Shown here in pieces: positions 17,898 through 60,078 of a DNA stretch of 64,000 bases (position 1 is its first letter; every line of letters begins with the position of its first letter). The position numbers and the translations under genes were made by a program. The stretch is taken from the sequence record LR745206.1. The stretch is one strand, 5' to 3'. The notes under the pieces were generated by a model. That model had not been told where the DNA came from and ran no database searches. It saw only the letters and a program-made list of their open reading frames with translations.

Positions 17898-18055
17898 TGG
17901 ATAAAAGTTGGATAAAAATATCAATTAATAGCTACTACGGTACTTATAATTCTGGTAAATCAAACTTTGATATGAAACCACTTTGGGTTAAATATCGTAG
18001 TGGTAAAAGGAAGTCAAAGATAAAAAATATATGGAAGATAGATGGGATGTTATAA
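17897..18055 (+). CDS. 52-aa tagged micro-protein with PolB motif-B-like segment, not in ORF track
   Basis: MDKSWIKISINSYYGTYNSGKSNFDMKPLWVKYRSGKRKSKIKNIWKIDGML; TAATG coupling. Confidence 0.6.
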   Translation: MDKSWIKISINSYYGTYNSGKSNFDMKPLWVKYRSGKRKSKIKNIWKIDGML

Positions 18056-18363
18056 ATGTTGTTTGTATAAAGGGATATAAAACATTGAAAGTTGGTTCCT
18101 CTTATCAGATAAAGGGTCGTGGAAATCTAACATATAATGCTGATCCAGAAGTTGGTGGTAAAAAAGGTCAAGGATATTGTATAGAGGATGGTATGTATGG
18201 GTCTTATAGTGGTAGAACCGATTGGTACCGATTGCCTTATAATGAAAGGATTAAGTGGTATTATTTTACCGAAAAAGAAATGGGTGATTACTTTATAACA
18301 GATAATGAAAATCATATAATATATTTAAGAGATAGAAAAATTAATAGTATAATAAATGATTGA
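18031..18363 (+). CDS. tagged hypothetical protein
   Basis: ends YLRDRKINSIIND. Confidence 0.7.
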   Translation: MEDRWDVINVVCIKGYKTLKVGSSYQIKGRGNLTYNADPEVGGKKGQGYCIEDGMYGSYSGRTDWYRLPYNERIKWYYFTEKEMGDYFITDNENHIIYLRDRKINSIIND

Positions 18364-19371: not shown

Positions 19372-19949
19372 ATAGATCGGATTTAATTAAGATAATTAGA
19401 AGGTCACAAACCTTTATATCAATTATGCTTTTCTTTGGTGTTTTTTTCTTTTCCTGGGATGTTACTGGTTTTGAATTAACCGAAATACAACTATCTAAGT
19501 GGGGAGAAACTGGTTCTATTGTAGAATCAATATGGAACTCGGCTGTTTGTTTATTGTCTATATCAATATTGTTCAATTCTATATATTATCTAAAAAATAA
19601 TAATAGAATTAAATATAAAACAACATCATATGTTTTATTCTCACTGATTTCGATTTGTCTATTTGTTATAGGTTTTTTTAATGTTAATCATAACTTTATA
19701 CATAATCTAGCTGCTTATTTATACTTTTTCATATATCCATTTTCAATTTTCATCTTTGCTCACTTAAACAGAAAGACTTTACATTATAAGGATTGGATAC
19801 AACATGTTGTTATATCGATATCCATGATGGTTTTACCGCTTATTTTTATATCTTTGTTTAATGGTATGGCTTTGGCTGAAATGACACACATTTTATTTGT
19901 TGTTATTTGGAATTTAAAAATAGCATTTAAGTCAATAAATGATGAATGA
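19368..19949 (+). CDS. multi-pass membrane protein (DUF998-like)
   Basis: about five hydrophobic helices; FIHNLAA segment. Confidence 0.6.
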   Translation: MNRSDLIKIIRRSQTFISIMLFFGVFFFSWDVTGFELTEIQLSKWGETGSIVESIWNSAVCLLSISILFNSIYYLKNNNRIKYKTTSYVLFSLISICLFVIGFFNVNHNFIHNLAAYLYFFIYPFSIFIFAHLNRKTLHYKDWIQHVVISISMMVLPLIFISLFNGMALAEMTHILFVVIWNLKIAFKSINDE

Positions 19950-20292
19950 GAATGAATTCATAGATTGGATAAAGGAATTGGGATTTTCTAAAACTTGGGA
20001 AACATATGATGGTGAGTATTCAATAAAACCTGGTGGTGATGGTATATTTGATCCTAAGATTTATTTTACTACTTCTTATGAAGAATCAGAAATTAAAATT
20101 GGTATACATTATGCTAAAATGAATGGTACGATGTCATATGGATCTAATATAGGATATTTCAATATTAGTCAAATAGGTGAATTTGAAAAAATAATTATAG
20201 TGCATAAACTTATTGAATATTTTGATGAAGTTCCAATTGGATTCAAAAAGTATTTAAGAGATTCTAAAATTAAAGACATTTTAGGGTATTAA
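19939..20292 (+). CDS. tagged hypothetical protein
   Basis: ends YLRDSKIKDILGY. Confidence 0.7.
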   Translation: MMNENEFIDWIKELGFSKTWETYDGEYSIKPGGDGIFDPKIYFTTSYEESEIKIGIHYAKMNGTMSYGSNIGYFNISQIGEFEKIIIVHKLIEYFDEVPIGFKKYLRDSKIKDILGY

Positions 20293-22988: not shown

Positions 22989-23058
22989 GGTTGGGTGACC
23001 GAGAGATAGGTGGAGACTCGCAAAGTCTTTTACGGTGGTTCAAATCCATCCCCAACCT
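22989..23058 (+). tRNA. tRNA-Cys(GCA), non-canonical
   Basis: acceptor GGTTGGG/CCCAACC, D stem ACC/GGT, anticodon stem GAGAC/GTCTT with loop TCGCAAA, T arm GGTGG-TTCAAAT-CCATC, U73 discriminator, no encoded CCA. Confidence 0.85.
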
Positions 23059-23071
23059 CTAATTTATATTT

Positions 23072-43880: not shown

Positions 43881-44131
43881 AGAAACTTAAAATGCAAAAA
43901 GATTATTGGTTTCCTAGTCCAGATTATGTTAATAGATTTGGTCGTAAAAGAAGTATTGCTAAAATATTTGACCTTGAGTATGACGAATCTGATTTAGTAA
44001 ATTCCTCACAAATTCATTGGAGTAGTACCACTGCTCAACCAAGAATGAAATTTGTAATACCTATTGGTGATATGAAAGATAAACCAAGTATTGCTAAAAG
44101 AATCAAGGATTTGATAAAAAAATTCAAATAA
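43877..44131 (+). CDS. portal-like fragments flanking a tag
   Basis: QKDYWFPS, GRKRSIAKIF, RMKFVIPIGDM..KDLIKKFK. Confidence 0.6.
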   Translation: MKKLKMQKDYWFPSPDYVNRFGRKRSIAKIFDLEYDESDLVNSSQIHWSSTTAQPRMKFVIPIGDMKDKPSIAKRIKDLIKKFK

Positions 44132-44160
44132 GGTAGTCATGTGGGTATAATATATACCCT

Positions 44161-44490
44161 ATGATTAAGATTTATTTAATTTGTGCTGAAATAGGTGGTG
44201 AGAAGATGTATAAAATAGGTTATACAAAAAGAACAATTGAACAAAGAATAAAGGAATTTAAGACTGGTAATGCGTCCGAGTTCACTATAATAGATTCTTT
44301 TCAATCAGATTGGGGTACTAAAATAGAGGCACAATTACATAAGAGATTTAATCATAAAAAGGTTAATGGTGAGTGGTTTAAGTTAGATGAATCTGATATA
44401 AATAAGTTTCAAGATATGTGTAGTTTAATACATAATAATTTAGAAATTGTCTCTAAAACGACATATTATTTAGATAGAGGAGACTTTTAA
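44161..44490 (+). CDS. GIY-YIG-like T5orf172/MUG113 nuclease
   Basis: YKIGYTK..RIKE..IEAQLHKRF..GEWF. Confidence 0.8.
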   Translation: MIKIYLICAEIGGEKMYKIGYTKRTIEQRIKEFKTGNASEFTIIDSFQSDWGTKIEAQLHKRFNHKKVNGEWFKLDESDINKFQDMCSLIHNNLEIVSKTTYYLDRGDF

Positions 44491-44529
44491 ACTTATTTAG
44501 ATAAATAAATATAAAAAATAAAAGATATA

Positions 44530-44802
44530 ATGGGATCAATGAAAGAAATTAGTATTAGAGAATATATTTCTAATATAGACTTCAAACGAGATGATTGGAA
44601 ACTTTCAGTTATGAAAGAAGATATGAGAAAATTCTTAGGTGAAGAACCAGGTATCGATATCATTTACAAAAAAGATGTAATGATAAACGAAACAACACAA
44701 GAAGCTCAAGAATATGTTGATATCAATAAAGTTCAAATAGTTTTTTTTGATACTGATGAAAAATTTAAGAAACTAGAGTTTCTGATAGATGATAATGTTT
44801 AA
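44530..44802 (+). CDS. hypothetical protein
   Basis: 90-aa ORF in operon. Confidence 0.6.
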   Translation: MGSMKEISIREYISNIDFKRDDWKLSVMKEDMRKFLGEEPGIDIIYKKDVMINETTQEAQEYVDINKVQIVFFDTDEKFKKLEFLIDDNV

Positions 44803-45016
44803 AATGGACTTAAAAAATTACTACCTAGATCTTAAAAAAGTTTCTGAATTGGAATTAGAAGAAGATAGAAAAATTATACATGACTATTATAGGGATATGT
44901 TGAGTTATAATTATGAAAAAAGAGAAGAAATCGCAATTTCTATGTTTAATACACTATATAGTGGTGACTATTTAAAAGAAGTTCGTGATGAAAAAATTGA
45001 TCAAATACTTTCTTAA
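44789..45016 (+). CDS. tagged hypothetical protein
   Basis: ends VRDEKIDQILS; start may be a few codons later. Confidence 0.65.
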   Translation: MIMFKMDLKNYYLDLKKVSELELEEDRKIIHDYYRDMLSYNYEKREEIAISMFNTLYSGDYLKEVRDEKIDQILS

Positions 45017-45333
45017 TGGAAATAAAAGCTGATATATTAGATTACTTGGGTAAAATAGATGATGGTATTATTGTTTTACTTTCATTATCATATGATGGTG
45101 TGTATTATGAGGGAACACTATATTATAAGGATAAGTTAGTTGCTTTAACACCAGATGAAGTTCTTGAAGAGAAATTGGGATCTGTTATAGAAGATTGGGA
45201 AGGTTATAATGATTTAATGTTAGAAATACTTAAAAAAGTTGTTCCTTATGATGAGATGATTACTAGGGTTGATGATATTGATATGAATCAATATGGTATT
45301 GAACTAGGTAATAGTGACGAATCAATCGATTAA
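45016..45333 (+). CDS. acidic hypothetical protein
   Basis: 105-aa ORF, TAATG coupling. Confidence 0.6.
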   Translation: MEIKADILDYLGKIDDGIIVLLSLSYDGVYYEGTLYYKDKLVALTPDEVLEEKLGSVIEDWEGYNDLMLEILKKVVPYDEMITRVDDIDMNQYGIELGNSDESID

Positions 45334-45663
45334 TTCATTAAGTTTAATATTTCGATTAACCATTTTAAATTCATCAATCAAATCTCCCCAATATTTAAAC
45401 TTAATTCTATACTTACAACTCTTACCTAATTTAATATTAGACCAAGATTTTCCATCAGTTTTAAAATCCTTACTTATTGGAAATTGATATAAGTACATAA
45501 ACCAATAATTTCTATCTCTACTTTTTAAGAAATCTTTATTGTCTTTCAGATGATATGTATAATAAGCTTTTATAGCTTCATCATAATAATCACATATATA
45601 GTGTATTTCTGGCAATCCTTGTCCTCTTTGACAGGACATAATATAAATAAATTTCTCTTCCAT
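45322..45663 (-). CDS. tagged hypothetical protein
   Basis: ends VNRNIKLNELID. Confidence 0.65.
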   Translation of the reverse strand: MEEKFIYIMSCQRGQGLPEIHYICDYYDEAIKAYYTYHLKDNKDFLKSRDRNYWFMYLYQFPISKDFKTDGKSWSNIKLGKSCKYRIKFKYWGDLIDEFKMVNRNIKLNELID

Positions 45664-45697
45664 ATAGATTTTTATTAAAAAAGAGTATAAAGTTGTA

Positions 45698-46336
45698 TTA
45701 GATATTGATAAATCTCAATGTCATACCAAAAGCCTCTTCTTCATCAAAAGAAATAGACTCATTTTTTAGATTTAACTGGTCTTTTATCCTTGCACATAGT
45801 GGAGTTAATTCATCACTTAGAACACCTAATGATTCTACATTTAGTTGATTATCCGAACCTAATCTAACAAATATATAATTTGAATTTTCATAAACTTCAT
45901 AGAATTCAATATTATCTAAAGTTGAGACAGCTATTAACTCAACATCTTTAGATATCTGTGATATCTTTGGATACCCAATCATTTCACCATCTGTTTCAAA
46001 CTCATCTCTTATTTGGTTGTAAAAATCAATAGATTTAGATATAATTACTGATTTATCACCATAACTCTTTCTTCGTAATTTACTTTCCCAATTACTACCA
46101 ACCCAACTAGGATCATCATTAAATTCTTTTTTATACCAAGTGTATATTTCTTTTGATATTTTATCATATCTCCATTCAGTATATTTTAATATACCTCCCA
46201 TAATATCTTTAAAAATATCTGATGATATCAAATCATTTATTTCTTTTTCTCCCATGAAATCACCAACTTTATCTTTTATTTCGGATAATTGTTCATCAGT
46301 ATAAGATTCTAGAAATTTAACCCACTTTTTAATCAT
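45698..46336 (-). CDS. hypothetical protein, putative head-packaged
   Basis: likely start MIKKWVKFLES at 46336, directly after late motif 46341-46350. Confidence 0.7.
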   Translation of the reverse strand: MIKKWVKFLESYTDEQLSEIKDKVGDFMGEKEINDLISSDIFKDIMGGILKYTEWRYDKISKEIYTWYKKEFNDDPSWVGSNWESKLRRKSYGDKSVIISKSIDFYNQIRDEFETDGEMIGYPKISQISKDVELIAVSTLDNIEFYEVYENSNYIFVRLGSDNQLNVESLGVLSDELTPLCARIKDQLNLKNESISFDEEEAFGMTLRFINI

Positions 46337-46394
46337 ATAATATATATTAAACTTACATTGTAAAAATGATATAAATAAAAAATAATAATATTGA

Positions 46395-48092
46395 ATGCTT
46401 ATAAGTGAAATAGGAATTAGAGGATATAAATCATTTGGAAATAACGAACAAATATTAAAACTAAATACCGAAAGAGGTGAACTATTACTTCTTGTTGGTA
46501 ACAATGGTAATGGTAAATCTTCATTACTAGAATCTTTTGAATACGTATTATACGGTAAAGTTAAATCAGGTAAAACAAAAAAATGGCATAAATTATCCAC
46601 GTTACCTAATAGGATAAATGGTGAGATGTTAAATCGAATAAAATTTGTTGCTAGTGGAACTGATGTTGAGATTAAAAGAGGTATATCACCTGGTATATTG
46701 GAGTTAACTGAAAATGGTCTTGTTAATGAAAGAGCTGGTAAATCCAACTTAGATGATCATATTGAAAAATATATTGGATTGGATATCGAAACATTCAAAT
46801 CTTTTATATCAATGTCTATAAATGATTTCAAAAACTTTATATCATTAACAAATGAGGAGAAAAAATTATTACTTGATAAGCTATTTAACCTAGAAGTCAT
46901 TAATATTCTAAACGGTATATTAAAAGACATCAATAAAAATAATAAAATTAGATTAGCCTCTTTGGATTCTGAGATAAGAACACTCGAAGAATCAATTGAT
47001 TCTATAAAAAGATCTATTGCTAATGCTATCGAAAGAGAAAAGGAAAATCTTCAACAAGAAATAGATGTTCTTGTAGAAGATATGAATTCTAAAAAAGAAG
47101 ATTATGCAGCATTAAAAGACAAGGTTGAGAAGATAAAGGAAAAAGAGAAAATATTATCCGATGAAATGGATAATGAAAAGAAACAATATATCAATACACA
47201 GAATGATATCAGAAATGTACAAAAGGAGATAGATCTTTATGATTCTGGTAAATGTCCAACTTGTTCAACTGATTTTAAATCAACACATTTTGCTGATTTA
47301 AGAACATCATTAATTGAAAAGAAACAAGGATATGAAAATATTAAAATTGAAATTGAAGAAAATATTAAATCTGTTAAATCTAAACAAGTTAAATTAAAGG
47401 AAATTGGTGATGGTACCACTTCCTCTTTTACGGATTTGAGTTATCTATTGAGAAACTATAAAACTAAGATAGATGAGTTATCAAGAAAGAAGAGTAAAGA
47501 AAATGGTAAAGAATCAGTTAATGTTCAAGAGTTTCAAAAAACAATTGAAGAATTAGAGGGTAAGAAATCATTTAGTCATGATAATATTTCTATCAGTAAA
47601 GAGAAAGAACTTTATTATAAAGAGTTAAATAGAATTTTTGGTGAAGATGGTGTTAAGAAAGCAATCATTGCTGGTATTATAAAACCAATAAACCACTTCA
47701 TAAGAGAAAATATTAAAACGATGGGTTTACCTTTTGGTGTTCAATTAGATGAGACTTTCACTGCTGAGATTAAAATGTTGGGAACACCTATTGAACACGA
47801 TTCATTATCAACTGGTGAGACAAAGAAGATTAATATAGCTATATTAATAGCTTACTTGAAATTAATTAGAACTAAAAAACACATCAATATACTCTTCTTA
47901 GATGAGGTCTTTGCCTCAATTGATATCGAGGGTATAGATTCTATATTGGGTCTCTTAAAATCATTTGCAAATGACTACAATATCAATATATTTGTTGTTC
48001 ACCACGCAATTCTTAGTCAGGAGATGTTTGATAGAATTATAAAAATAAACAAAGATGTTTTTTCATCAATAGAGGAAGTAGAATATGAATGA
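46395..48092 (+). CDS. SbcC/Rad50/T4 gp46-like recombination ATPase
   Basis: GNNGNGKS Walker A, coiled coil with CPTC hook, LSTGE signature, LFLDE Walker B. Confidence 0.9.
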   Translation: MLISEIGIRGYKSFGNNEQILKLNTERGELLLLVGNNGNGKSSLLESFEYVLYGKVKSGKTKKWHKLSTLPNRINGEMLNRIKFVASGTDVEIKRGISPGILELTENGLVNERAGKSNLDDHIEKYIGLDIETFKSFISMSINDFKNFISLTNEEKKLLLDKLFNLEVINILNGILKDINKNNKIRLASLDSEIRTLEESIDSIKRSIANAIEREKENLQQEIDVLVEDMNSKKEDYAALKDKVEKIKEKEKILSDEMDNEKKQYINTQNDIRNVQKEIDLYDSGKCPTCSTDFKSTHFADLRTSLIEKKQGYENIKIEIEENIKSVKSKQVKLKEIGDGTTSSFTDLSYLLRNYKTKIDELSRKKSKENGKESVNVQEFQKTIEELEGKKSFSHDNISISKEKELYYKELNRIFGEDGVKKAIIAGIIKPINHFIRENIKTMGLPFGVQLDETFTAEIKMLGTPIEHDSLSTGETKKINIAILIAYLKLIRTKKHINILFLDEVFASIDIEGIDSILGLLKSFANDYNINIFVVHHAILSQEMFDRIIKINKDVFSSIEEVEYE

Positions 48093-48384
48093 GATAGACA
48101 ATTTATTATGTGATTTGTTTGAGATTAGGAATAGTAAACATTCTGTTATCAAAAAACAAAAGTATGAGAAAGCTGCTGAATTGAGAGATTCTGAGAGACA
48201 ATTAGAAGTTAAAATCTATAAGATTCTCTATTCGGAAGAATTATATGATTGGGAAAAATTATCAGAAGGTATAAGTAAGTATTGCTTTGACACATATGGT
48301 TTTATATATGATAATAAAGATTATGATTCTAATTTTAGAGAAACAATTCGAGAAATAAAATTAAAACAACTGGGTATAAAATAA
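48085..48384 (+). CDS. UVR-domain (ClpC middle domain-like) protein plus tag
   Basis: KHSVIKKQKYEKAAELRDSERQL; ends IREIKLKQLGIK. Confidence 0.7.
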   Translation: MNEIDNLLCDLFEIRNSKHSVIKKQKYEKAAELRDSERQLEVKIYKILYSEELYDWEKLSEGISKYCFDTYGFIYDNKDYDSNFRETIREIKLKQLGIK

Positions 48385-48394
48385 TACATATATT

Positions 48395-48664
48395 ATGGCA
48401 AATCAGAAATTATCAACAAAACAACTTTCATCTACTGGTATTCCATCAGGTAGTGTTTTAATATCGGATGGGACTGGTAATGTTACTTGGAATGATACCA
48501 TATCAATGAATTCTGATATGATAGACTTTTTTGAGTTGGTATTAGTAGCACTTGGATATGATATAACTTATGATGAGTTTAGTAAGATGAGTGGTGAAGA
48601 GAAAAAAGCAATCATTCGTGATATAAAAATTAAAAGGGTATTAGATGTTAATAATAAAGATTAA
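48395..48664 (+). CDS. tail-fibre-repeat-like fragment plus tag
   Basis: GSVLISDGTGNVTW; ends IRDIKIKRVL. Confidence 0.6.
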   Translation: MANQKLSTKQLSSTGIPSGSVLISDGTGNVTWNDTISMNSDMIDFFELVLVALGYDITYDEFSKMSGEEKKAIIRDIKIKRVLDVNNKD

Positions 48665-48839
48665 AGAAGGAGAGAAAATAGATAGAGCTCTAAAGAGATA
48701 CAAGGCTAAATACAATAAAACTAAAATTGGTAAAGAATTGAGAGATAGAAAAAATTTCAAGAAGAAAAGTGTTAAACGTAGAGAGGAATTAAGTAAAGCT
48801 ATCTATATTCAAAATATTAAAGATTCAGAACAAGATTAA
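48645..48839 (+). CDS. rpsU: 30S ribosomal protein bS21
   Basis: MLIIKIKEGEKIDRALKRYK..ELRDRKNFKKKSVKRR..KAIY. Confidence 0.88.
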   Translation: MLIIKIKEGEKIDRALKRYKAKYNKTKIGKELRDRKNFKKKSVKRREELSKAIYIQNIKDSEQD

Positions 48840-48840
48840 T

Positions 48841-49275
48841 ATGGGTTTCAATAAGAGATATATTAAAAAGGAAATGATATTGGATAATGTTAATAACATT
48901 TCTTATATAAAAGGATTAGTTAAGGCTGATGCTTTGATAATGGATAATTGGTCTGTGAAATTCTTTGATAACTTCAATTTTAAATATGAAACATATAATA
49001 AAATAAGAGAAGGTATAAAAGAAGATACAATATTTGATTCACATCATAATAATGTCCTTAATCATGAAAATTATAAAGAATTATTTAATTTATCAAATGT
49101 CCTTTTGAACCTTAAAACAGATCCAGCTTGGATTGATATTTTATTAACAAGTGATATTTTAAAAGAACTCGATATGGATTTTGTAGAAAAACAAAACCCA
49201 CCAGAAGATATAAGAGGTAGATTTAACGAATTGGTACCTTATTTTATTAAAGTAATAGAAGATTATTATGGATAA
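48841..49275 (+). CDS. hypothetical protein
   Basis: 144-aa ORF starting MGFNKRYI. Confidence 0.6.
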   Translation: MGFNKRYIKKEMILDNVNNISYIKGLVKADALIMDNWSVKFFDNFNFKYETYNKIREGIKEDTIFDSHHNNVLNHENYKELFNLSNVLLNLKTDPAWIDILLTSDILKELDMDFVEKQNPPEDIRGRFNELVPYFIKVIEDYYG

Positions 49276-49987
49276 GAATAAAAATTATTATGATATACTT
49301 GGTGTTATACATAAATCAGAACCAAATCAAATAAAAAAAGCTTATTATAAATTATCATTTATACACCATCCTGATAAAGGAGGAGATCCTGTTGTATTTG
49401 GTGAAATGACCGAAGCTTATGATGTTCTTTGTGATGAAAAATCAAGAGAAGAATATGACTCAAAAAGTAAATATGGTAAAAACTATGATGAATATTTTGA
49501 GTTGTTTGATATAAAGGTTGATTTCACATATGAAGATAGTAAAGATCATTTAGAAAAATTCAAAAAAAATGAAATAAATAATATTCAATTAGAAATTGAC
49601 GAAACATTTAATGGTAAAATCGAGTATGAAAGATGGGTAAAGTGTAAATCTTGTGATGGTAGTGGAAAAGATATGTCTGGAAAGATAGTTATCAGGGATA
49701 ATGATGGAAATGTTGTTAAGACATTTGATGCTGAGGATGGTTGTGATTTCTGTGAAGGAAGTGGTAAGAGTTATGATGGTTCTGATTGTTCATTTTGTGT
49801 TGGTCAGGGAAAAGTTGGACTAAAACCATGTGATAATTGTATTGGTAATGGTAGAATTATGGGTAAACAAAAATTATCTGGTATTAAATTAGTTGGTGAT
49901 GAAACTAAACTAGACACAATGGGTCATTTTTCTAAGAATGGTGTTGGATATTTACTTTTATTAAAAAAATCTGAAAAAAATTCATAA
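49268..49987 (+). CDS. dnaJ: DnaJ-family co-chaperone, C-terminally short
   Basis: NYYDILGV..HHPDKGG J-domain; four CxxCxGxG repeats. Confidence 0.85.
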   Translation: MDKNKNYYDILGVIHKSEPNQIKKAYYKLSFIHHPDKGGDPVVFGEMTEAYDVLCDEKSREEYDSKSKYGKNYDEYFELFDIKVDFTYEDSKDHLEKFKKNEINNIQLEIDETFNGKIEYERWVKCKSCDGSGKDMSGKIVIRDNDGNVVKTFDAEDGCDFCEGSGKSYDGSDCSFCVGQGKVGLKPCDNCIGNGRIMGKQKLSGIKLVGDETKLDTMGHFSKNGVGYLLLLKKSEKNS

Positions 49988-49991
49988 TAAT

Positions 49992-50022
49992 TTTGGATAT
50001 CAAATATATTTTTGTATATTTG
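49992..50022 (+). promoter_or_regulatory. Bacteroidota-type -33/-7 promoter
   Basis: TTTG(49992)-N19-TATATTTG(50015-50022). Confidence 0.7.
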
Positions 50023-50053
50023 TATTATTAATCACTAAAAACAAAAATATATT

Positions 50054-50653
50054 ATGAAAACATTAAAAAACTTACTAGTCGCTATTGTGACTCTTTTCAC
50101 GTTGAGTTCTTACTCACAAACAACATATACTTATTATGTTGATAATACTCCATTTGGTTTTACTGGAACACAAAATGTCCAAGTCGGTGACGTTGTTGAG
50201 TTCGTAAATAGTTATGCTAGTGGAACACAATTTATTGCAAAAAGAGATGGTGTTGGTCTTGTTGGATATAACCCAACAAATACTACTAATATGGGAGCTG
50301 TTATTTACTCCTACACGATATTATCATCTGATGTTAATTTTGATATTCAAGTTGGTGTCGCTTCAGCATTTACTGCCTACTTTCAAAGAATTTATTTCAC
50401 TGTTTCTGCAACTACTGGTGTTGATGAAGTATCTAATACGAATTTCACTGTATATCCTAACCCAACAACTGATTTCTTAAATCTAAAGGGTGATAATATC
50501 GAATCTGTGAAGGTATTTGATATGAGTGGTAAACTTGTGTTATCAGATACATATAACACATCAAATGTTAAATTAGATGTAACATCATTAGTCAATGGTT
50601 ACTACACAGTATTAGTAAATGATGTTAAACCAATCAAGTTTATTAAGAACTAA
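50054..50653 (+). CDS. secreted protein with T9SS type A C-terminal sorting domain
   Basis: signal peptide MKTLKNLLVAIVTLFTLSSYS then Q; C-terminal VYPNPTT..VKVFDMSGKLV..LDVTSLVNGYY..KFIKN. Confidence 0.88.
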   Translation: MKTLKNLLVAIVTLFTLSSYSQTTYTYYVDNTPFGFTGTQNVQVGDVVEFVNSYASGTQFIAKRDGVGLVGYNPTNTTNMGAVIYSYTILSSDVNFDIQVGVASAFTAYFQRIYFTVSATTGVDEVSNTNFTVYPNPTTDFLNLKGDNIESVKVFDMSGKLVLSDTYNTSNVKLDVTSLVNGYYTVLVNDVKPIKFIKN

Positions 50654-50669
50654 AAATAAAGATTAATAG

Positions 50670-50696
50670 AAAACCCACTTTAGAGTGGGTTTTTTT
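50670..50696. terminator. bidirectional intrinsic terminator
   Basis: AAAACCCACT-TTAG-AGTGGGTTTTTTT. Confidence 0.8.
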
Positions 50697-50699
50697 ATG

Positions 50700-53663
50700 C
50701 TATAGAATGAAAAGTCCCTCTCCACTATTACCACCACCGCCACTTGGAGGTTCGGTTGATTGTTCGGTAGATAGACTATCCAATCCTATTGTTATATTGT
50801 CTATAAATGAAAAATCACTATCTGTATAATCTATGAATGGTGCTATTCCTTGGTAAGGTATTTGTATAGATTTATTTACATACTCTTCTGTTGTGTACTG
50901 GAAGAATGGTATCATATCTAATTCATATAATTTTATATTATCAAATGATGCTGTTAATCCACCAAGATTTAATAATAAAATATCTAATCCTCTTCTGTTA
51001 TAAAAATATTCATATTTTTTTATATTATTGGTTAAGGCATGATATACATAATCAGATATTGGAAATGCTGGATCTGCTAATCCTGGTATGTTTGTATTAT
51101 TCAGTAGGTATATGCTCGGTAGTGAGTTAATTGGAAATGTATCATTTATAGTGGAATACTCGGTTAAATCAAACTCAACAACTGAATATCTTTTTTTAGA
51201 AATATTAATATTTGTATTATCTAATGTTAATATTGAAAATGGATCAGTTAATTTTATTTGAATAGATTCATCACTTTTCCTATTTATTTCACTATTGGTA
51301 CCACCAAATAATCCTATACTGAATGTCCATCCGTTATCATAGAAATTATCCATGGTTCCGTTAGCTGGTATGGTGCTAAATGGTTCATTAAATTCAGATA
51401 CTTCACCAAGAAAATCTTCATATATTTTATGTTTTGTTCCCAATGAATATATAGACTTACCAAGAGAGTGGCTATTTCTAAATGATGATATACTAGATAA
51501 TACATCATTTGTTATATATCCATATAGATTGTTTTCGGAAAATTCTCCATATTGTGGACTATAAGAAACTAAACTTCTTCCTAAATTTGATGCTGATTGT
51601 GTTAAGTATTTAACATCAATCCATGAATTATATTTATATATAAGTGATAGATTAGTAGATTCTACTGATGTTACATTAGTACCAACATTATTATCATAAA
51701 ATTCGAAATTTTGAATAACTCCTGTTCCTGTTCTTCTTGATATTTGTCCACCTTCTGCTGTTGTTGATGATCCAAATTGTTTATCAAGTAGTATTAAATA
51801 ATCATTAATAACATCAACTACCGTAGCATCTCCATCATATTGTGGATTTAAAAGCTTATTTGTCTTATCAACATAAACTAAATCACCAACTTTAAATCCA
51901 TGTTGTGTTGAGAATGTAAGACCTAATGTATATTGATTTCCTGAAATATAATATGTATCATAGAATGTATATTCTGGGTATTCACCATAGAAGTGACCAC
52001 CATCATATTTACCATCAATCCAATGACTATCATACATTTCTGTTATATAAGGGAATCCTTTAAATAGACCAGCATTCCATATACCCTCAAAATATCCATT
52101 AAGGAATCCACCGTTTAGCCAAACATTTTTGGTCATTTTTATTTTATGATTATCTGAATCTTTTTCTATTCTCCTAAGTGGGAATGTATTTACAAAATCA
52201 ACAATTATGCTATTTGTGGTAACTGATAATACAGTAAAATAGTTTTTCATTAATTTCCTATTCTCATTTATATCAATACCTACAATATTACCAATTGATA
52301 CTTTATCACCTATATTAAAATTAGATGTTGATGATTGTGGACCAGTTATTTTAATCCTCCATCTTGTATTTTTAGTTTCCATTAATAATGATATTTCGAT
52401 ATCATCAAACTCATATACCTCTGTATCAACTCTCCAACCACTATTCCATACTCCATTTTCCCAAACACCAGCTTTGAATGTTCCATTACCAACTTTTGCT
52501 CTAAGAAAATTTAAGTTTACAACATCACCATACAGATTAGAAAAGAATCCTGGGAAACCAGTAGCTCCTAAAAAGGTTGAAGATGTTGGATTATGTAGTG
52601 TATCATCACCTATTACAACAACACTATAAGTTGCATCTGGTGATCCACCAATAACACCTAATGGTGTCGGTTCGTAATAATTACCAGAGTTTGTAAATAA
52701 AAATTGTTCATTATTATCAATTTCTTGATATGATCCTTCTATTATTATATTTGATATTGTTAGTGTTGCGTTTGATTCAAAATAATTAGCTACAAATAGA
52801 ACATATTGATCACCTATTAGATTATAAAAATTATAACTACCACTTTCTTCTATCTTACCTAGAAATTGTCCATTTTGTAATACCGAATTGAATGTTGCTG
52901 TATTTGTTGTTTTCAATGAAGATAGATAGATATCATCTATTAAATACATATTAACATATGATTGTGTTGTTGATCCACTTACTGCTATATCAAAAGATAT
53001 ATTGAATATTGGATATTCAATAAGCTTTGTTATATAGTTACTAGCGGTATATCCTAATTGTGTTATACCACTATTATTTGTACCAGCTGGATATCTCCTC
53101 GTTGATGATATTGTTGTGTTTGATTTCCACTTAAAAGATTCTGATGCTGTAGCATACTCCCACCCTAGATTTAAGGAGCTTGATGTTATAGACCAACCTT
53201 GTATAAACCAATCAAACTCAACAACTTCAAATCCATTTATTGTAGGTATTCCAAATGTATCAGATGCTGGATTACCGAATCCATTATAAGTTGATTTATA
53301 TTCCACCATATCACTTGATACTTTAGGGGCTGCTGGTTTTGAATACATATATACTTTTTCTGCAATAGGTAGTGATGGTCTGCTATCATATAATGGATTT
53401 GCATTCTGTATATATGAGAATGTTGCATCCCAAGGAGTTTCTATTTCTAAAAATTTTGAAAAAGTCGGTGATCCATCGAAATTAGAAAAATCATCAACTG
53501 TTGTTATAAATTGATAGTTCTTGTTTGGGCTAAAGGTTTTGGTTGTTGAAACATACCATAAACTATATGTGGTCGAAGCTCCAGAGCTTGATCTGGTCAT
53601 ACCACCTTCCGATGCGTTATATACCCATTTACTACCACCTGTTGTACTTGTCTGCCAACCCAT
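50700..53663 (-). CDS. 987-aa virion/tail protein with W/G repeats
   Basis: GTFKAGVWENGVWNSGW, GYFEGIWNAGLF; beta-rich. Confidence 0.65.
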   Translation of the reverse strand: MGWQTSTTGGSKWVYNASEGGMTRSSSGASTTYSLWYVSTTKTFSPNKNYQFITTVDDFSNFDGSPTFSKFLEIETPWDATFSYIQNANPLYDSRPSLPIAEKVYMYSKPAAPKVSSDMVEYKSTYNGFGNPASDTFGIPTINGFEVVEFDWFIQGWSITSSSLNLGWEYATASESFKWKSNTTISSTRRYPAGTNNSGITQLGYTASNYITKLIEYPIFNISFDIAVSGSTTQSYVNMYLIDDIYLSSLKTTNTATFNSVLQNGQFLGKIEESGSYNFYNLIGDQYVLFVANYFESNATLTISNIIIEGSYQEIDNNEQFLFTNSGNYYEPTPLGVIGGSPDATYSVVVIGDDTLHNPTSSTFLGATGFPGFFSNLYGDVVNLNFLRAKVGNGTFKAGVWENGVWNSGWRVDTEVYEFDDIEISLLMETKNTRWRIKITGPQSSTSNFNIGDKVSIGNIVGIDINENRKLMKNYFTVLSVTTNSIIVDFVNTFPLRRIEKDSDNHKIKMTKNVWLNGGFLNGYFEGIWNAGLFKGFPYITEMYDSHWIDGKYDGGHFYGEYPEYTFYDTYYISGNQYTLGLTFSTQHGFKVGDLVYVDKTNKLLNPQYDGDATVVDVINDYLILLDKQFGSSTTAEGGQISRRTGTGVIQNFEFYDNNVGTNVTSVESTNLSLIYKYNSWIDVKYLTQSASNLGRSLVSYSPQYGEFSENNLYGYITNDVLSSISSFRNSHSLGKSIYSLGTKHKIYEDFLGEVSEFNEPFSTIPANGTMDNFYDNGWTFSIGLFGGTNSEINRKSDESIQIKLTDPFSILTLDNTNINISKKRYSVVEFDLTEYSTINDTFPINSLPSIYLLNNTNIPGLADPAFPISDYVYHALTNNIKKYEYFYNRRGLDILLLNLGGLTASFDNIKLYELDMIPFFQYTTEEYVNKSIQIPYQGIAPFIDYTDSDFSFIDNITIGLDSLSTEQSTEPPSGGGGNSGEGLFIL

Positions 53664-59297: not shown

Positions 59298-59524
59298 AAG
59301 AATATAAAGTAATTAACTGTGGTGATTATTATGTTGTTAGATATGATAATTTCAACCATGGATATGGTAATGATAGAAAATATAGAACATATGAACAGGC
59401 TATGTCTGATATTTATAGATATTATAAAGATATAAAAACTGTGGATTATGAGTCAAAGTCGGAGCGAGAAGCTCGTATTCTATCCGAAAAGAGAAATAGT
59501 GTAATTGATAAAATTTTAGGATAA
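59294..59524 (+). CDS. tagged hypothetical protein
   Basis: ends KRNSVIDKILG. Confidence 0.65.
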   Translation: MKEYKVINCGDYYVVRYDNFNHGYGNDRKYRTYEQAMSDIYRYYKDIKTVDYESKSEREARILSEKRNSVIDKILG

Positions 59525-60078
59525 TGCTTTGGTATCATTGGGTCATTGGTTTTTCTATAGCGTTATCCCTTTTATCGGTTATATTATCTATACCATCAAT
59601 TATAACTATTTATAGAATTGGTTTAAAAGACTATGTTAGAAACATAAAACTACTTTATAATCTTAGAAAAAGGCTAAGTCTATGTTATCAACTAAATACC
59701 AATAGAACTTATAATTATCAAGTTAATGGAAGTTCTGTAAAAACCACAAATCAGATAGACATTGATTATTATTTTCCAATATATCTTAATGATAAAAATG
59801 TTGTTATTGTTAATAAGAGAGGTAAAGGTTTGTGGTATAACCTAATAATAAATGATGCGAGTTATGATGGTAAGGATTGGGTAACTAATATTATTGAAAT
59901 AAAAACATCTACTTGTATGCTAACACAAATTCTTAATGATAGATTTCAATCAAAATTAGATAAATTTACAAAGAACAAAATTTTATTAGAGGATATTAAA
60001 GATTTAAATGAATTAATTAATAGTGAGATAGTGAGTATTAGAAGAGATAGTAAATTAAATTTATTAATAAATGAATAG
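59524..60078 (+). CDS. membrane-anchored tagged protein
   Basis: N-terminal hydrophobic helix; ends RRDSKLNLLINE. Confidence 0.65.
   Translation: MLWYHWVIGFSIALSLLSVILSIPSIITIYRIGLKDYVRNIKLLYNLRKRLSLCYQLNTNRTYNYQVNGSSVKTTNQIDIDYYFPIYLNDKNVVIVNKRGKGLWYNLIINDASYDGKDWVTNIIEIKTSTCMLTQILNDRFQSKLDKFTKNKILLEDIKDLNELINSEIVSIRRDSKLNLLINE

What the first reader, a model, noticed from the sequence alone, without database searches (positions are those of the whole stretch)
48085..48384. ClpC middle-domain (UVR) mimic carrying the tag
KHSVIKKQKYEKAAELRDSERQL matches the UVR coiled coil of ClpC (B. subtilis KDAAVQSQEFEKAASLRDTEQRL, recalled). In ClpC this helix binds adaptors and controls the resting state. 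As a stand-alone piece with IREIKLKQL it could hijack or block Clp proteolysis, and it links the tag family to protein degradation, next to bS21 and DnaJ (inference).
Basis: partly seen in the sequence, partly recalled or inferred. Interest (0 to 1): 0.7.

Follow-up and report, generated by a model that had tools for sequence, protein, structure and literature searches.

The report
Stand-alone ClpC M-domain hairpin protein
A 99-residue protein of a 635-kb phage of Bacteroidota copies the regulatory coiled coil of the ClpC unfoldase and ends in a C-terminal motif shared by about 12% of the phage's genes, so it probably tunes a Clp protease, but nothing has been tested at the bench.

Summary
ORF 48085-48384 (+) is a real 99-aa gene, with at least 54 homologue clusters of 95-105 aa. 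Residues 1-49 form a UVR helical hairpin (Pfam UVR, just above the curated cut-off). The hairpin is ClpC-like, not UvrB/UvrC-like. The family profile hits only ClpC/ClpC1 M-domains in the PDB (E 1e-5 to 3e-3) and no UvrB or UvrC. It is 61-68% identical over 31 residues to chromosomal ClpC of Flavobacteriales, the likely host group. Y27, R34 and D35 align with ClpC F436, R443 and D444, the residues of the resting-state and adaptor contacts.

The window is part of huge phage LR745206.1. That phage encodes its own ClpC-like ATPase without an N-domain, two ClpP and two more UVR proteins. The target may therefore be the phage's own Clp machine, not only the host's.

The "tag" is real and large. R-[DEN]-x-[KR]-[LI]-x-x-[LIVM] lies within 10 residues of the C-terminus in 111 of 948 genes, about 80 times the internal rate. 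This protein is the only tagged one tested whose head matches a known family.

My best reading is an M-domain decoy or regulator of a ClpC-type unfoldase (confidence about 0.45). No link between the tag and degradation is shown.

The parts
48085..48384 (+). Gene for the 99-aa protein (M-domain-like hairpin, two further helices and the C-terminal tag); the stop TAA is at 48382-48384
   Evidence: ORF list and sequence. 54 homologue clusters, nearly all 95-105 aa and full length. AlphaFold2 model with pLDDT 86.6 and pTM 0.76 has four helices: 3-23, 27-49, 56-71 and 80-95.
48085..48231 (+). Residues 1-49: UVR / ClpC M-domain-like helical hairpin with tip residues Q25, Y27, R34 and D35
   Evidence: Pfam UVR 22.6 bits. 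The family profile hits only ClpC/ClpC1 M-domains in the PDB, E 1e-5 to 3e-3. 61-68% identity over residues 11-41 to Flavobacteriales ClpC. 40.1 bits to the phage's own ClpC M-domain. The family's conserved columns coincide with the conserved ClpC M-domain core.
48250..48297 (+). Residues 56-71: predicted helix 3 with near-invariant Y66. It is absent from the 71-aa version in phage LR756502.1.
48349..48378 (+). Residues 89-98, REIKLKQLGI: the C-terminal tag core. It lies within predicted helix 4 (80-95) and is followed by K99 and the stop.
   Evidence: R89 is invariant, and IRxIKLKxLGI-COOH is conserved in the family. The same motif ends 111 of 948 genes of the phage. All 92 IMG/VR pattern matches translate in frame to the motif.
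46395..48092 (+). SbcC/Rad50-like ATPase (565 aa, CxxC hook); its stop overlaps the start of the 99-aa gene by 8 nt
   Evidence: PHROG 77 with 243 bits; Pfam SMC_N and SbcC_Walker_B. The SbcC-then-hairpin order is conserved in L001, L002, L015-L017, L254, L255 and LR756502.1.
48395..48664 (+). 89-aa neighbour with a tag-like C-terminus (IIRDIKIKRVLDVNNKD) and no known family
   Evidence: A homologue sits at the same place in L001 and LR756502.1.
48645..48839 (+). Phage-encoded ribosomal protein bS21
   Evidence: Pfam Ribosomal_S21, 46.8 bits.
49268..49987 (+). DnaJ-like protein (J domain plus part of the CXXCXGXG zinc region)
   Evidence: Pfam DnaJ 63.2 bits; DnaJ_CXXCXGXG 22.8 bits, below its cut-off.
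45322..45663 (-). 113-aa tagged protein (ends VNRNIKLNELID)
44789..45016 (+). 75-aa tagged protein (ends VRDEKIDQILS)
18031..18363 (+). 110-aa tagged protein (ends LRDRKINSIIND)
19939..20292 (+). 117-aa tagged protein (ends LRDSKIKDILGY)
59524..60078 (+). 184-aa tagged protein (ends IRRDSKLNLLINE)

Best explanation
The gene encodes a small phage protein whose first ~50 residues are a free-standing copy of the ClpC middle-domain coiled coil (a UVR helical hairpin).

In ClpC the tip of this hairpin (F436, R443, D444) binds the tip of another M-domain. That contact holds ClpC in an inactive resting state, and the same tip is also the docking site for the adaptor MecA.

The phage protein keeps the equivalent residues (Y27, R34, D35). 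It therefore most likely docks tip-to-tip on the M-domain of a ClpC-type unfoldase. The candidates are the phage's own N-domain-less ClpC-like ATPase, which has a VGF ClpP-binding loop and comes with two phage ClpP genes, and/or the ClpC of the Flavobacteriales host.

By capping M-domain tips it would compete with ClpC-ClpC contacts and shift the unfoldase from the repressed assembly to active hexamers. In that case it is a de-repressor or regulator rather than a blocker. It might also occupy the adaptor site.

The C-terminal helix carries the clade-wide tag R-[DE]-x-K-L-x-x-L-G-I. I read this as a common address or partner-binding label of unknown receptor.

Shown: the homology, the conservation, and the Clp genes in the same genome. 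Inferred: the binding, its direction and the target.
For: - Pfam UVR scores above its cut-off, and 39 of 53 members match it.
- The family profile against the PDB hits 14 ClpC/ClpC1 sequences at E 1e-5 to 3e-3, over profile positions 8-53. McsA scores E 0.93. No UvrB or UvrC appears at E<=10.
- In the phage's own ORF set the hairpin profile scores 40.1 bits (E 2.4e-11) on the ClpC-like M-domain. The two other UVR proteins score 13.7 and 10.4 bits.
- The best 80 matches in bacterial genomes are ClpC of Flavobacteriales. 76 of the 80 ORFs are 800-899 aa; the twelve printed are 843-864 aa. Identity is 61-68% over residues 11-41.
- The best 80 matches in IMG/VR are phage-encoded ClpC-like ATPases.
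- Y27, R34 and D35 align with F436, R443 and D444. These are the residues of the head-to-head contacts. Mutating them gives adaptor-independent activity, and MecA binding breaks the contacts (PMC5699869).
- The conserved family columns equal the conserved ClpC M-domain core.
- The phage encodes a 701-aa ClpC-like protein with AAA, AAA_lid_9, UVR, AAA_2 and ClpB_D2-small domains and the sequence GVGF. It has no room for Clp_N. It also encodes two ClpP (183 and 228 bits).
- The related 642-kb phage has the same pairing: a ClpC-like gene plus a 71-aa hairpin+tag protein after SbcC.
- There are precedents. UVR-domain proteins are enriched in CLPC1 traps in plastids, and the adaptor CLPF has a UVR domain (PMC8889267). 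Phage SPO1 Gp53 binds ClpC and competes with MecA (PMC6873191).
Against: - There is no interaction data of any kind, and co-folding was not possible with these tools.
- The residues shared with ClpC are also the general UVR signature ([FY]E-AA-LRD). Their conservation alone does not prove a ClpC partner.
- The hairpin is about equally similar to host-type ClpC (45-47% over 49 aa), to other phages' ClpC (41-47%) and to the phage's own ClpC (39%). The target cannot be assigned.
- The gene is not near the phage clpC or clpP genes, which lie 127-221 kb away. Instead it is translationally coupled to an SbcC-like gene in most relatives.
- Foldseek gave no significant whole-fold match. The best PDB hits are ClpC, but at E 0.3-1.
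- The direction of the effect (activation or inhibition) is extrapolated from Firmicute ClpC.
Confidence: 0.45

Rival explanations
1. Adaptor for the tag family. The hairpin docks on the (phage) ClpC M-domain while the C-terminal tag helix pairs with the same helix on other tagged proteins, or shares their receptor. The ~110 tagged small proteins would thereby be delivered to ClpC-ClpP for timed removal.
For: - The protein combines the only Clp-related module with the tag.
- The tag is on 111 of 948 genes, mostly small (median 105 aa).
- The phage has a complete ClpC/ClpP set.
- The phage ClpC lacks the N-domain that normally takes adaptors and substrates, which leaves the M-domain as a docking site.
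- The 71-aa version in LR756502.1 is just hairpin plus tag.
Against: - No evidence shows that tags bind each other or that tagged proteins are unstable.
- A ten-residue motif with fixed R, D, K, L, L, G and I is longer than the short C-terminal degrons I know of, which are a few residues long (my own knowledge).
- Phages with ClpC-like genes outside this clade carry no tags (3 weak hits in 879 kb). ClpC and the tag are therefore not generally coupled.
Confidence: 0.15
2. Accessory factor of DNA metabolism. UVR hairpins also mediate the UvrB-UvrC contact. Here the hairpin could couple the protein to the SbcC/Rad50-like ATPase encoded just upstream, or to the phage's BFN-nuclease+UVR protein.
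For: - There is an 8-nt start/stop overlap with the SbcC-like gene.
- The SbcC-then-hairpin order is conserved down to ~41% identity of the hairpin protein: P0011, P0016, P0013 and LR756502.1.
- Nucleases lie nearby in relatives (Exo_endo_phos, Endonuclease_NS).
- The phage has a BFN_dom+UVR protein.
Against: - The hairpin profile finds no UvrB or UvrC in the PDB and scores the BFN-UVR hairpin at only 10.4 bits.
- The SbcC-like protein has no UVR motif.
- Three more distant family members (P0022, P0038, P0069) are not next to SbcC. The linkage may be inherited gene order only.
Confidence: 0.15
3. An ordinary tagged small protein. The captured hairpin serves only as a stable dimerising scaffold for the tag, as the UvrB C-terminal hairpin dimerises. 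It has no functional relation to Clp.
For: - UVR hairpins self-associate in several contexts (established knowledge).
- All other tagged proteins tested have unrelated heads of unknown function.
- The gene lies in a tag-rich block.
Against: - The family's nearly invariant columns in the hairpin are the tip and the ClpC-type core (Q25, Y27, A30, R34, D35, E37).
- Similarity to ClpC M-domains stays high (up to 68% over 31 aa) across a family that is otherwise only ~30-55% identical.
Confidence: 0.2

Closest known systems
M-domain (middle / linker coiled coil, UVR motif) of ClpC, ClpE and ClpL Hsp100 unfoldases
   Same: It has the same two-helix hairpin of about 45-50 residues and the same core, K-x6-Q-x-[YF]-E-x-A-A-x-L-R-D-x-E. 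The tip residues match F436, R443 and D444. It is up to 68% identical over 31 residues to Flavobacteriales ClpC.
   Different: It is not inserted in an AAA+ D1 domain. It is a free 99-aa protein with two extra helices and a C-terminal tag that ClpC lacks.
Phage SPO1 Gp53, an adaptor-like modulator of B. subtilis ClpCP (PMC6873191)
   Same: It is a small phage protein proposed to act on a ClpC unfoldase at the surface used by adaptors.
   Different: My searches (Pfam, PHROGs, PDB sequences) returned no Gp53-like match, but I did not compare the two sequences directly. Gp53's binding surface on ClpC overlaps MecA's; the N-terminal domain and linker region are the known adaptor sites. Gp53 is not reported there as an M-domain copy. 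Gp53 has biochemical proof; this protein has none. Here the phage also brings its own ClpC and ClpP.
Plastid UVR-domain Clp partners: adaptor CLPF, and EXE1/2 and UVR2-4 (DUF151+UVR) trapped on CLPC1 (PMC8889267)
   Same: These are non-ATPase proteins that carry a UVR hairpin and associate with a ClpC-type chaperone. The phage also encodes a BFN(DUF151)+UVR protein of that architecture.
   Different: They have different partner domains (YccV, DUF151, EXECUTER). None is a minimal hairpin protein. The UVR-to-M-domain contact is not proven there either.
McsA, activator of the arginine kinase McsB (zinc fingers plus UVR)
   Same: It is a small Clp-pathway protein with a UVR motif.
   Different: The profile match is only E 0.93, and this protein has no zinc-finger cysteines.
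UvrB C-terminal and UvrC internal UVR domains
   Same: The Pfam family (PF02151) and the hairpin fold are the same.
   Different: The profile gives no match to UvrB or UvrC chains in the PDB at E<=10. There is no helicase or nuclease domain.

Membership tests
Pfam UVR (PF02151) domain | HMM score at or above the curated gathering cut-off | tested here: met
   22.6 bits against 21.5 for residues 19-41. 39 of 53 homologues match at E<=0.01, best 2.1e-7.
Pfam UVR (PF02151) domain | Antiparallel two-helix hairpin | tested here: met
   The AlphaFold2 model has helices 3-23 and 27-49 with block pLDDT 87-96. This is a prediction, not a solved structure.
ClpC-type M-domain (as a sequence class within UVR) | Closer to ClpC M-domains than to other UVR classes | tested here: met
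   In the PDB the profile hits ClpC/ClpC1 only, with McsA at 0.93 and no UvrB/C. In the same genome it scores 40.1 bits on ClpC against 13.7 and 10.4 bits on the other UVR proteins. Identity to Flavobacteriales ClpC is 61-68% over 31 aa.
ClpC-type M-domain (as a sequence class within UVR) | Tip residues equivalent to F436, R443 and D444 | tested here: met
   Y27, R34 and D35 by alignment. All three are at least 90% conserved in the family. ClpE has Tyr at the F436 position (PMC5699869).
Clp/Hsp100 AAA+ unfoldase (ClpC itself) | AAA+ D1 and D2 modules flanking the M-domain | tested here: not met
   The protein is 99 aa with no AAA Pfam hit. It is not a Clp ATPase and not a remnant of one: its length and its non-Clp C-terminal half are conserved in the family alignment of 53 clusters.
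ClpC regulators and adaptors (functional class: MecA, McsB, ClpF, Gp53) | Physical binding to ClpC and a change in its ATPase or proteolysis | not testable with these tools
   This needs a pull-down, ATPase and degradation assays, or a co-fold. Only single-chain prediction was available.
ClpC regulators and adaptors (functional class: MecA, McsB, ClpF, Gp53) | Sequence homology to a known adaptor family | tested here: not met
   Pfam, PHROGs and PDB sequence searches gave no MecA, ClpS, McsB or YccV match.
UvrB / UvrC nucleotide-excision repair proteins | Helicase (UvrB) or GIY-YIG/Endo V nuclease (UvrC) domains with a UVR hairpin of that type | tested here: not met
   No such domains were found, and no UvrB or UvrC chain appears at E<=10.
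Clade-wide C-terminal tag family (defined here) | R-[DEN]-x-[KR]-[LI]-x-x-[LIVM] ending within 10 residues of the C-terminus | tested here: met
   REIKLKQL ends 3 residues from the C-terminus. 111 of 948 genes share the feature, about 80 times the internal rate.

The most novel reading that the evidence does not exclude
Huge phages of this clade may run their own address-label proteostasis system. About one gene in eight ends in the peptide R-D-x-K-L-x-x-L-G-I. The hairpin+tag protein would be the link between that label and a phage-encoded, N-domain-less ClpC with two ClpP. Tagged early or host-takeover proteins would then be unfolded or destroyed on schedule by a virus-encoded tag-adaptor-protease circuit.
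Probability: 0.12. Interest if true: 0.9.

Novelty: new variant of a known kind. Interest (0 to 1): 0.62.

Why it matters
ClpC is kept off by M-domain contacts, and forcing it on is lethal to bacteria. A natural, free-standing M-domain would be a new kind of Clp regulator and a ready-made probe of the resting state.

It also matters for huge-phage biology. This phage carries its own ClpC-like unfoldase, two ClpP, a DnaJ-like protein and bS21. About 12% of its genes share a C-terminal motif that matches nothing known. This 99-aa protein is the only tagged protein found so far whose other half has a recognisable homologue, so it is the best entry point for finding out what the tag is for.

If the Clp link fails, the result is still a clean family definition and a clade marker.

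Tried and rejected
- Foldseek of the AF2 model against the PDB and BFVD gave nothing significant (best E 0.3, although the top PDB hits are ClpC).
- Pfam on 17 other tagged proteins and PHROGs on 4 of them gave no usable family; the only matches were two weak PHROGs of unknown function.
- PHROGs has no family for the 99-aa protein.
- The full 53-sequence alignment was too diverse for the locus finder. The 4-sequence alignment worked.
- A text search of the literature for the tag peptides found no paper.
- I tested whether the tag is a translated DNA signal, such as a promoter or a coupling element. I rejected this as the main cause. Codons for R, D, K and L vary synonymously, and all 92 IMG/VR pattern matches are in frame at ORF ends. 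However, the LGI ends often read GGN-ATA-TGA with an ATGA overlap, and tagged genes overlap the next gene in 47% of cases against 23%.
- The tag is not a tmRNA-type tag. The genome has no tmRNA and no suppressor tRNA.
- The gene is not a pseudogene remnant of clpC. Its length and non-Clp half are conserved.
- P0024, a 2356-aa repeat protein in the homologue list, is a spurious coiled-coil match.
- Origin of the hairpin from host or from phage ClpC could not be resolved. The identities are alike.
Full report
**Where the window comes from.** Window 44000-52000 is 100% identical to LR745206.1 292000-300000. LR745206.1 is a 634,780-bp "uncultured phage", so the window is record positions 248001-312000. 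Al-Shayeb et al. 2020 (PMC7162821) describe complete 634-735 kb genomes. They place them in the Mahaphage clade and predict that they replicate in Bacteroidetes. The window is 28.8% G+C and has no N.

**The observation.**
- Its ATG overlaps the stop of the upstream 565-aa SbcC/Rad50-like gene by 8 nt. That gene scores 243 bits on PHROG 77.
- Pfam UVR matches residues 19-41 at 22.6 bits, against a cut-off of 21.5.
- An exhaustive HMMER search of 1.84 billion representatives found 54 clusters with E<=1e-3. Nearly all are 95-105 aa and match end to end.
- In the alignment, K18 and R89 are invariant. M1, Q25, Y27, A30, R34, D35, E37 and Y66 are at least 90% conserved. The C-terminus reads IRxIKLKxLGI-COOH.
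- 39 of 53 members hit Pfam UVR.
- AlphaFold2 on this alignment gives pLDDT 86.6 and pTM 0.76, with helices 3-23, 27-49, 56-71 and 80-95.
- This is a real, conserved gene. It is not a chance ORF and not a decayed clpC fragment.

I ran that test in four ways.
- The family profile against all PDB sequences hits 14 distinct ClpC/ClpC1 sequences, one of them deposited under another name. E-values run from 1.1e-5 to 3e-3 over profile positions 8-53, which cover both helices. McsA scores E 0.93. No UvrB or UvrC chain appears at E<=10.
- I scored a profile of the hairpin on all ORFs of the phage itself. The phage's ClpC-like M-domain gets 40.1 bits (E 2.4e-11). The phage's two other UVR proteins get 13.7 and 10.4 bits.
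- A pattern scan of 185,579 bacterial and archaeal species genomes, confirmed by tblastn, returned 80 best hits. All but one carry Flavobacteriales or Bacteroidota titles, with 61-68% identity over residues 11-41. The ORFs are ClpC-length: 76 of 80 are 800-899 aa, and the twelve printed are 843-864 aa. Their M-domain reads LEEVRESKNSVVKKQKYEEAAKLRDDEKNLEKEL.
- The same scan of IMG/VR returned phage-encoded ClpC-like ATPases of 670-830 aa, with 42-60% identity over residues 4-44(58).

The family's conserved columns coincide with the conserved ClpC M-domain core. One caveat applies: both scans were seeded with patterns taken from the family, so they show where such hairpins occur, not a complete ranking.

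**What the M-domain does.** These points come from Carroni et al. 2017 (PMC5699869).
- F436, R443 and D444 at the M-domain tip make head-to-head contacts that build an inactive ClpC resting state.
- F436A, R443A, D444A and deletion of the M-domain give adaptor-independent proteolysis, and the M-domain mutants are toxic.
- F436 is needed for MecA binding, and MecA binding breaks the tip contacts.
- ClpC without its N-domain is still repressed.
- ClpE has Tyr at the F436 position.

By the alignments, query residue 10 pairs with ClpC 419. F436, R443 and D444 therefore correspond to Y27, R34 and D35, all nearly invariant in the family. The same residues are the general UVR signature, so this fits ClpC-type contacts but does not prove them.

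**The phage has its own Clp system.** I stitched the record from 12 fetched pieces plus the window and found four relevant things.
- A 701-aa ClpC-like ATPase lies at 423224-425329. It has AAA, AAA_lid_9, UVR (residues 297-329), AAA_2 and ClpB_D2-small domains. It aligns to other phages' ClpC from their residue 141-172 onward, which leaves no room for a Clp_N domain. It contains GVGF where ClpC has its ClpP-binding loop; I read this from the sequence, and the role of the loop is established knowledge.
- Two ClpP genes lie at 75119-75859 and 123556-124221 (183 and 228 bits).
- A 202-aa BFN_dom+UVR protein and a 129-aa protein with a C-terminal UVR are also present.
- The 642-kb relative LR756502.1 has a 707-aa ClpC-like gene of the same kind.

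Directly after its SbcC-like gene, LR756502.1 also has a 71-aa protein that is just hairpin plus tag: MIELPNVKDLMYLIEIFDRKKLAIYSQKYQDAAKLRDIERDFLKRFGMSFSSTRQDIVILIRELKLNDVIG. The two constant modules are therefore the hairpin and the tag.

In plastids, UVR-domain proteins are enriched on a CLPC1 trap, including some with the DUF151+UVR architecture, and the adaptor CLPF has a UVR domain (PMC8889267). Phage SPO1 Gp53 is a proven phage modulator of ClpC (PMC6873191).

**The tag.**
- A 16-residue profile of the family's C-terminus hits 69 ORFs of the phage. 60 of those hits lie within 10 residues of the ORF's end.
- The regex R[DEN].[KR][LI]..[LIVM] ends within 10 residues of the C-terminus in 111 of 948 non-overlapping ORFs (11.7%). 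There are only 24 internal matches, a per-position ratio of about 80.
- Eight tagged genes lie in the window.
- The heads of the tagged proteins look unrelated to one another. None of the 17 others tested matched a Pfam family, and the 4 of them also run against PHROGs gave only two weak matches of unknown function.
- Codons vary synonymously.
- The strict DNA pattern for RDxKLxxLGI-stop has 92 matches in IMG/VR. All translate in frame to the motif, and 89 end an ORF of at least 40 codons. They are concentrated in contigs of 170-480 kb.
- Controls: 879 kb of other ClpC-encoding phage loci gave 3 weak hits, and 470 kb of Flavobacteriales DNA gave none.
- In LR756502.1, three 50-kb pieces carry 21, 37 and 5 C-terminal tags.
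- Tagged genes are small (median 105 aa). They cluster, with 28 adjacent pairs against 13 expected. They overlap the next gene more often, 47% against 23%.
- The genome has no tmRNA and no suppressor tRNA.
- The tag is therefore a peptide-level hallmark of this clade. Its receptor and function are unknown.

**Gene context.** The order SbcC-like, hairpin protein, ~90-100-aa tagged protein..., bS21..., DnaJ-like is kept in L001 (54% identity), L254 (P0011), L255 (P0016) and LR756502.1. Short contigs of P0013 also show the SbcC-like gene upstream. Three more distant members sit in other contexts. This keeps a DNA-metabolism role alive as a rival, but it may simply be inherited gene order.

**Verdict.**
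- The mechanism I favour is an M-domain decoy that docks on ClpC-type M-domains and shifts the unfoldase out of its repressed state or occupies its adaptor site. The phage's own ClpC-ClpP is as likely a target as the host's. My confidence is about 0.45.
- The link between the tag and degradation is an attractive hypothesis with no direct support.
- I found no described stand-alone M-domain protein in Pfam, PHROGs, PDB sequences or the paper library. I rate the finding a new variant of a known kind, namely Clp regulators and phage modulators of Clp.

Noticed in passing
whole genome LR745206.1 (window coordinate + 248000); in the window, tagged genes start at 18031, 19939, 20830, 44789, 45322(-), 48085, 48395 and 59524: A C-terminal motif R-[DEN]-x-[KR]-[LI]-x-x-[LIVM], often ending ...LGI-COOH, closes 111 of 948 genes (11.7%). 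That is about 80 times its internal rate. The heads of these proteins look unrelated. It is also abundant in LR756502.1 (63 tags in 150 kb sampled) and in many IMG/VR contigs of 170-480 kb. It is absent from Flavobacteriales DNA and from other ClpC-encoding phages.
   Followed up: partly
outside the window: LR745206.1 423224-425329 (+), 75119-75859 (-), 123556-124221 (-): The phage encodes its own ClpC-like unfoldase and two ClpP paralogues. The unfoldase is 701 aa, has no N-domain, and has a UVR M-domain and a GVGF loop. LR756502.1 has the same kind of ClpC-like gene.
   Followed up: partly
outside the window: LR745206.1 525460-526068 (+) and 316859-317248 (-): There are two more small UVR proteins. 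One is a 202-aa bifunctional-nuclease (BFN/DUF151) + UVR protein, the architecture trapped on plant CLPC1. The other is a 129-aa protein with a C-terminal UVR.
   Followed up: partly
L260 20919-21134 (LR756502.1 320919-321134): A 71-aa minimal version of the family, just hairpin plus tag, sits directly after the SbcC-like gene of the 642-kb phage. tblastn at E<=0.01 had missed it.
   Followed up: yes
IMG/VR loci L021-L100: Many smaller phages (contigs of 18-245 kb) encode ClpC-like ATPases. About half lack the N-domain (~670-690 aa). A few ORFs (743, 750 and 1168 aa) carry extra N-terminal or internal sequence that may be inteins; I did not check this.
   Followed up: no
outside the window: LR745206.1 597241-597891 (+): A 216-aa tagged ORF shows, by eye, family-B DNA polymerase palm motifs (IDFNSLYPN, NSYW, YIDADM) and ends HIREDKLIELGI. 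Pfam found nothing.
   Followed up: no
window 48645-48839 and 48395-48664: The phage bS21 gene starts 20 nt before the end of the tagged 89-aa gene. The order 89-aa gene then bS21 is conserved in L001 and LR756502.1.
   Followed up: partly
window 50054-50653: A 199-aa protein with an N-terminal hydrophobic leader and a type IX secretion C-terminal sorting domain (47.7 bits) is encoded by the phage. This fits a Bacteroidota host.
   Followed up: no
window 45698-46747 (-): The mechanical 349-aa TTG ORF overlaps the SbcC-like gene start. The called gene in the relative L001 is 212 aa, so the real gene is probably 45698-46336. It matches no family.
   Followed up: partly
window 22989-23059, and LR745206.1 342-408 kb: The window holds a tRNA-Cys. 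The genome holds about 59 tRNA genes, mostly in three arrays. It has no tmRNA and no suppressor anticodon, so the standard genetic code applies.
   Followed up: yes
window 44161-44490: A small GIY-YIG-type (T5orf172/MUG113) protein is conserved at the same place in L001, L254 and L255.
   Followed up: no
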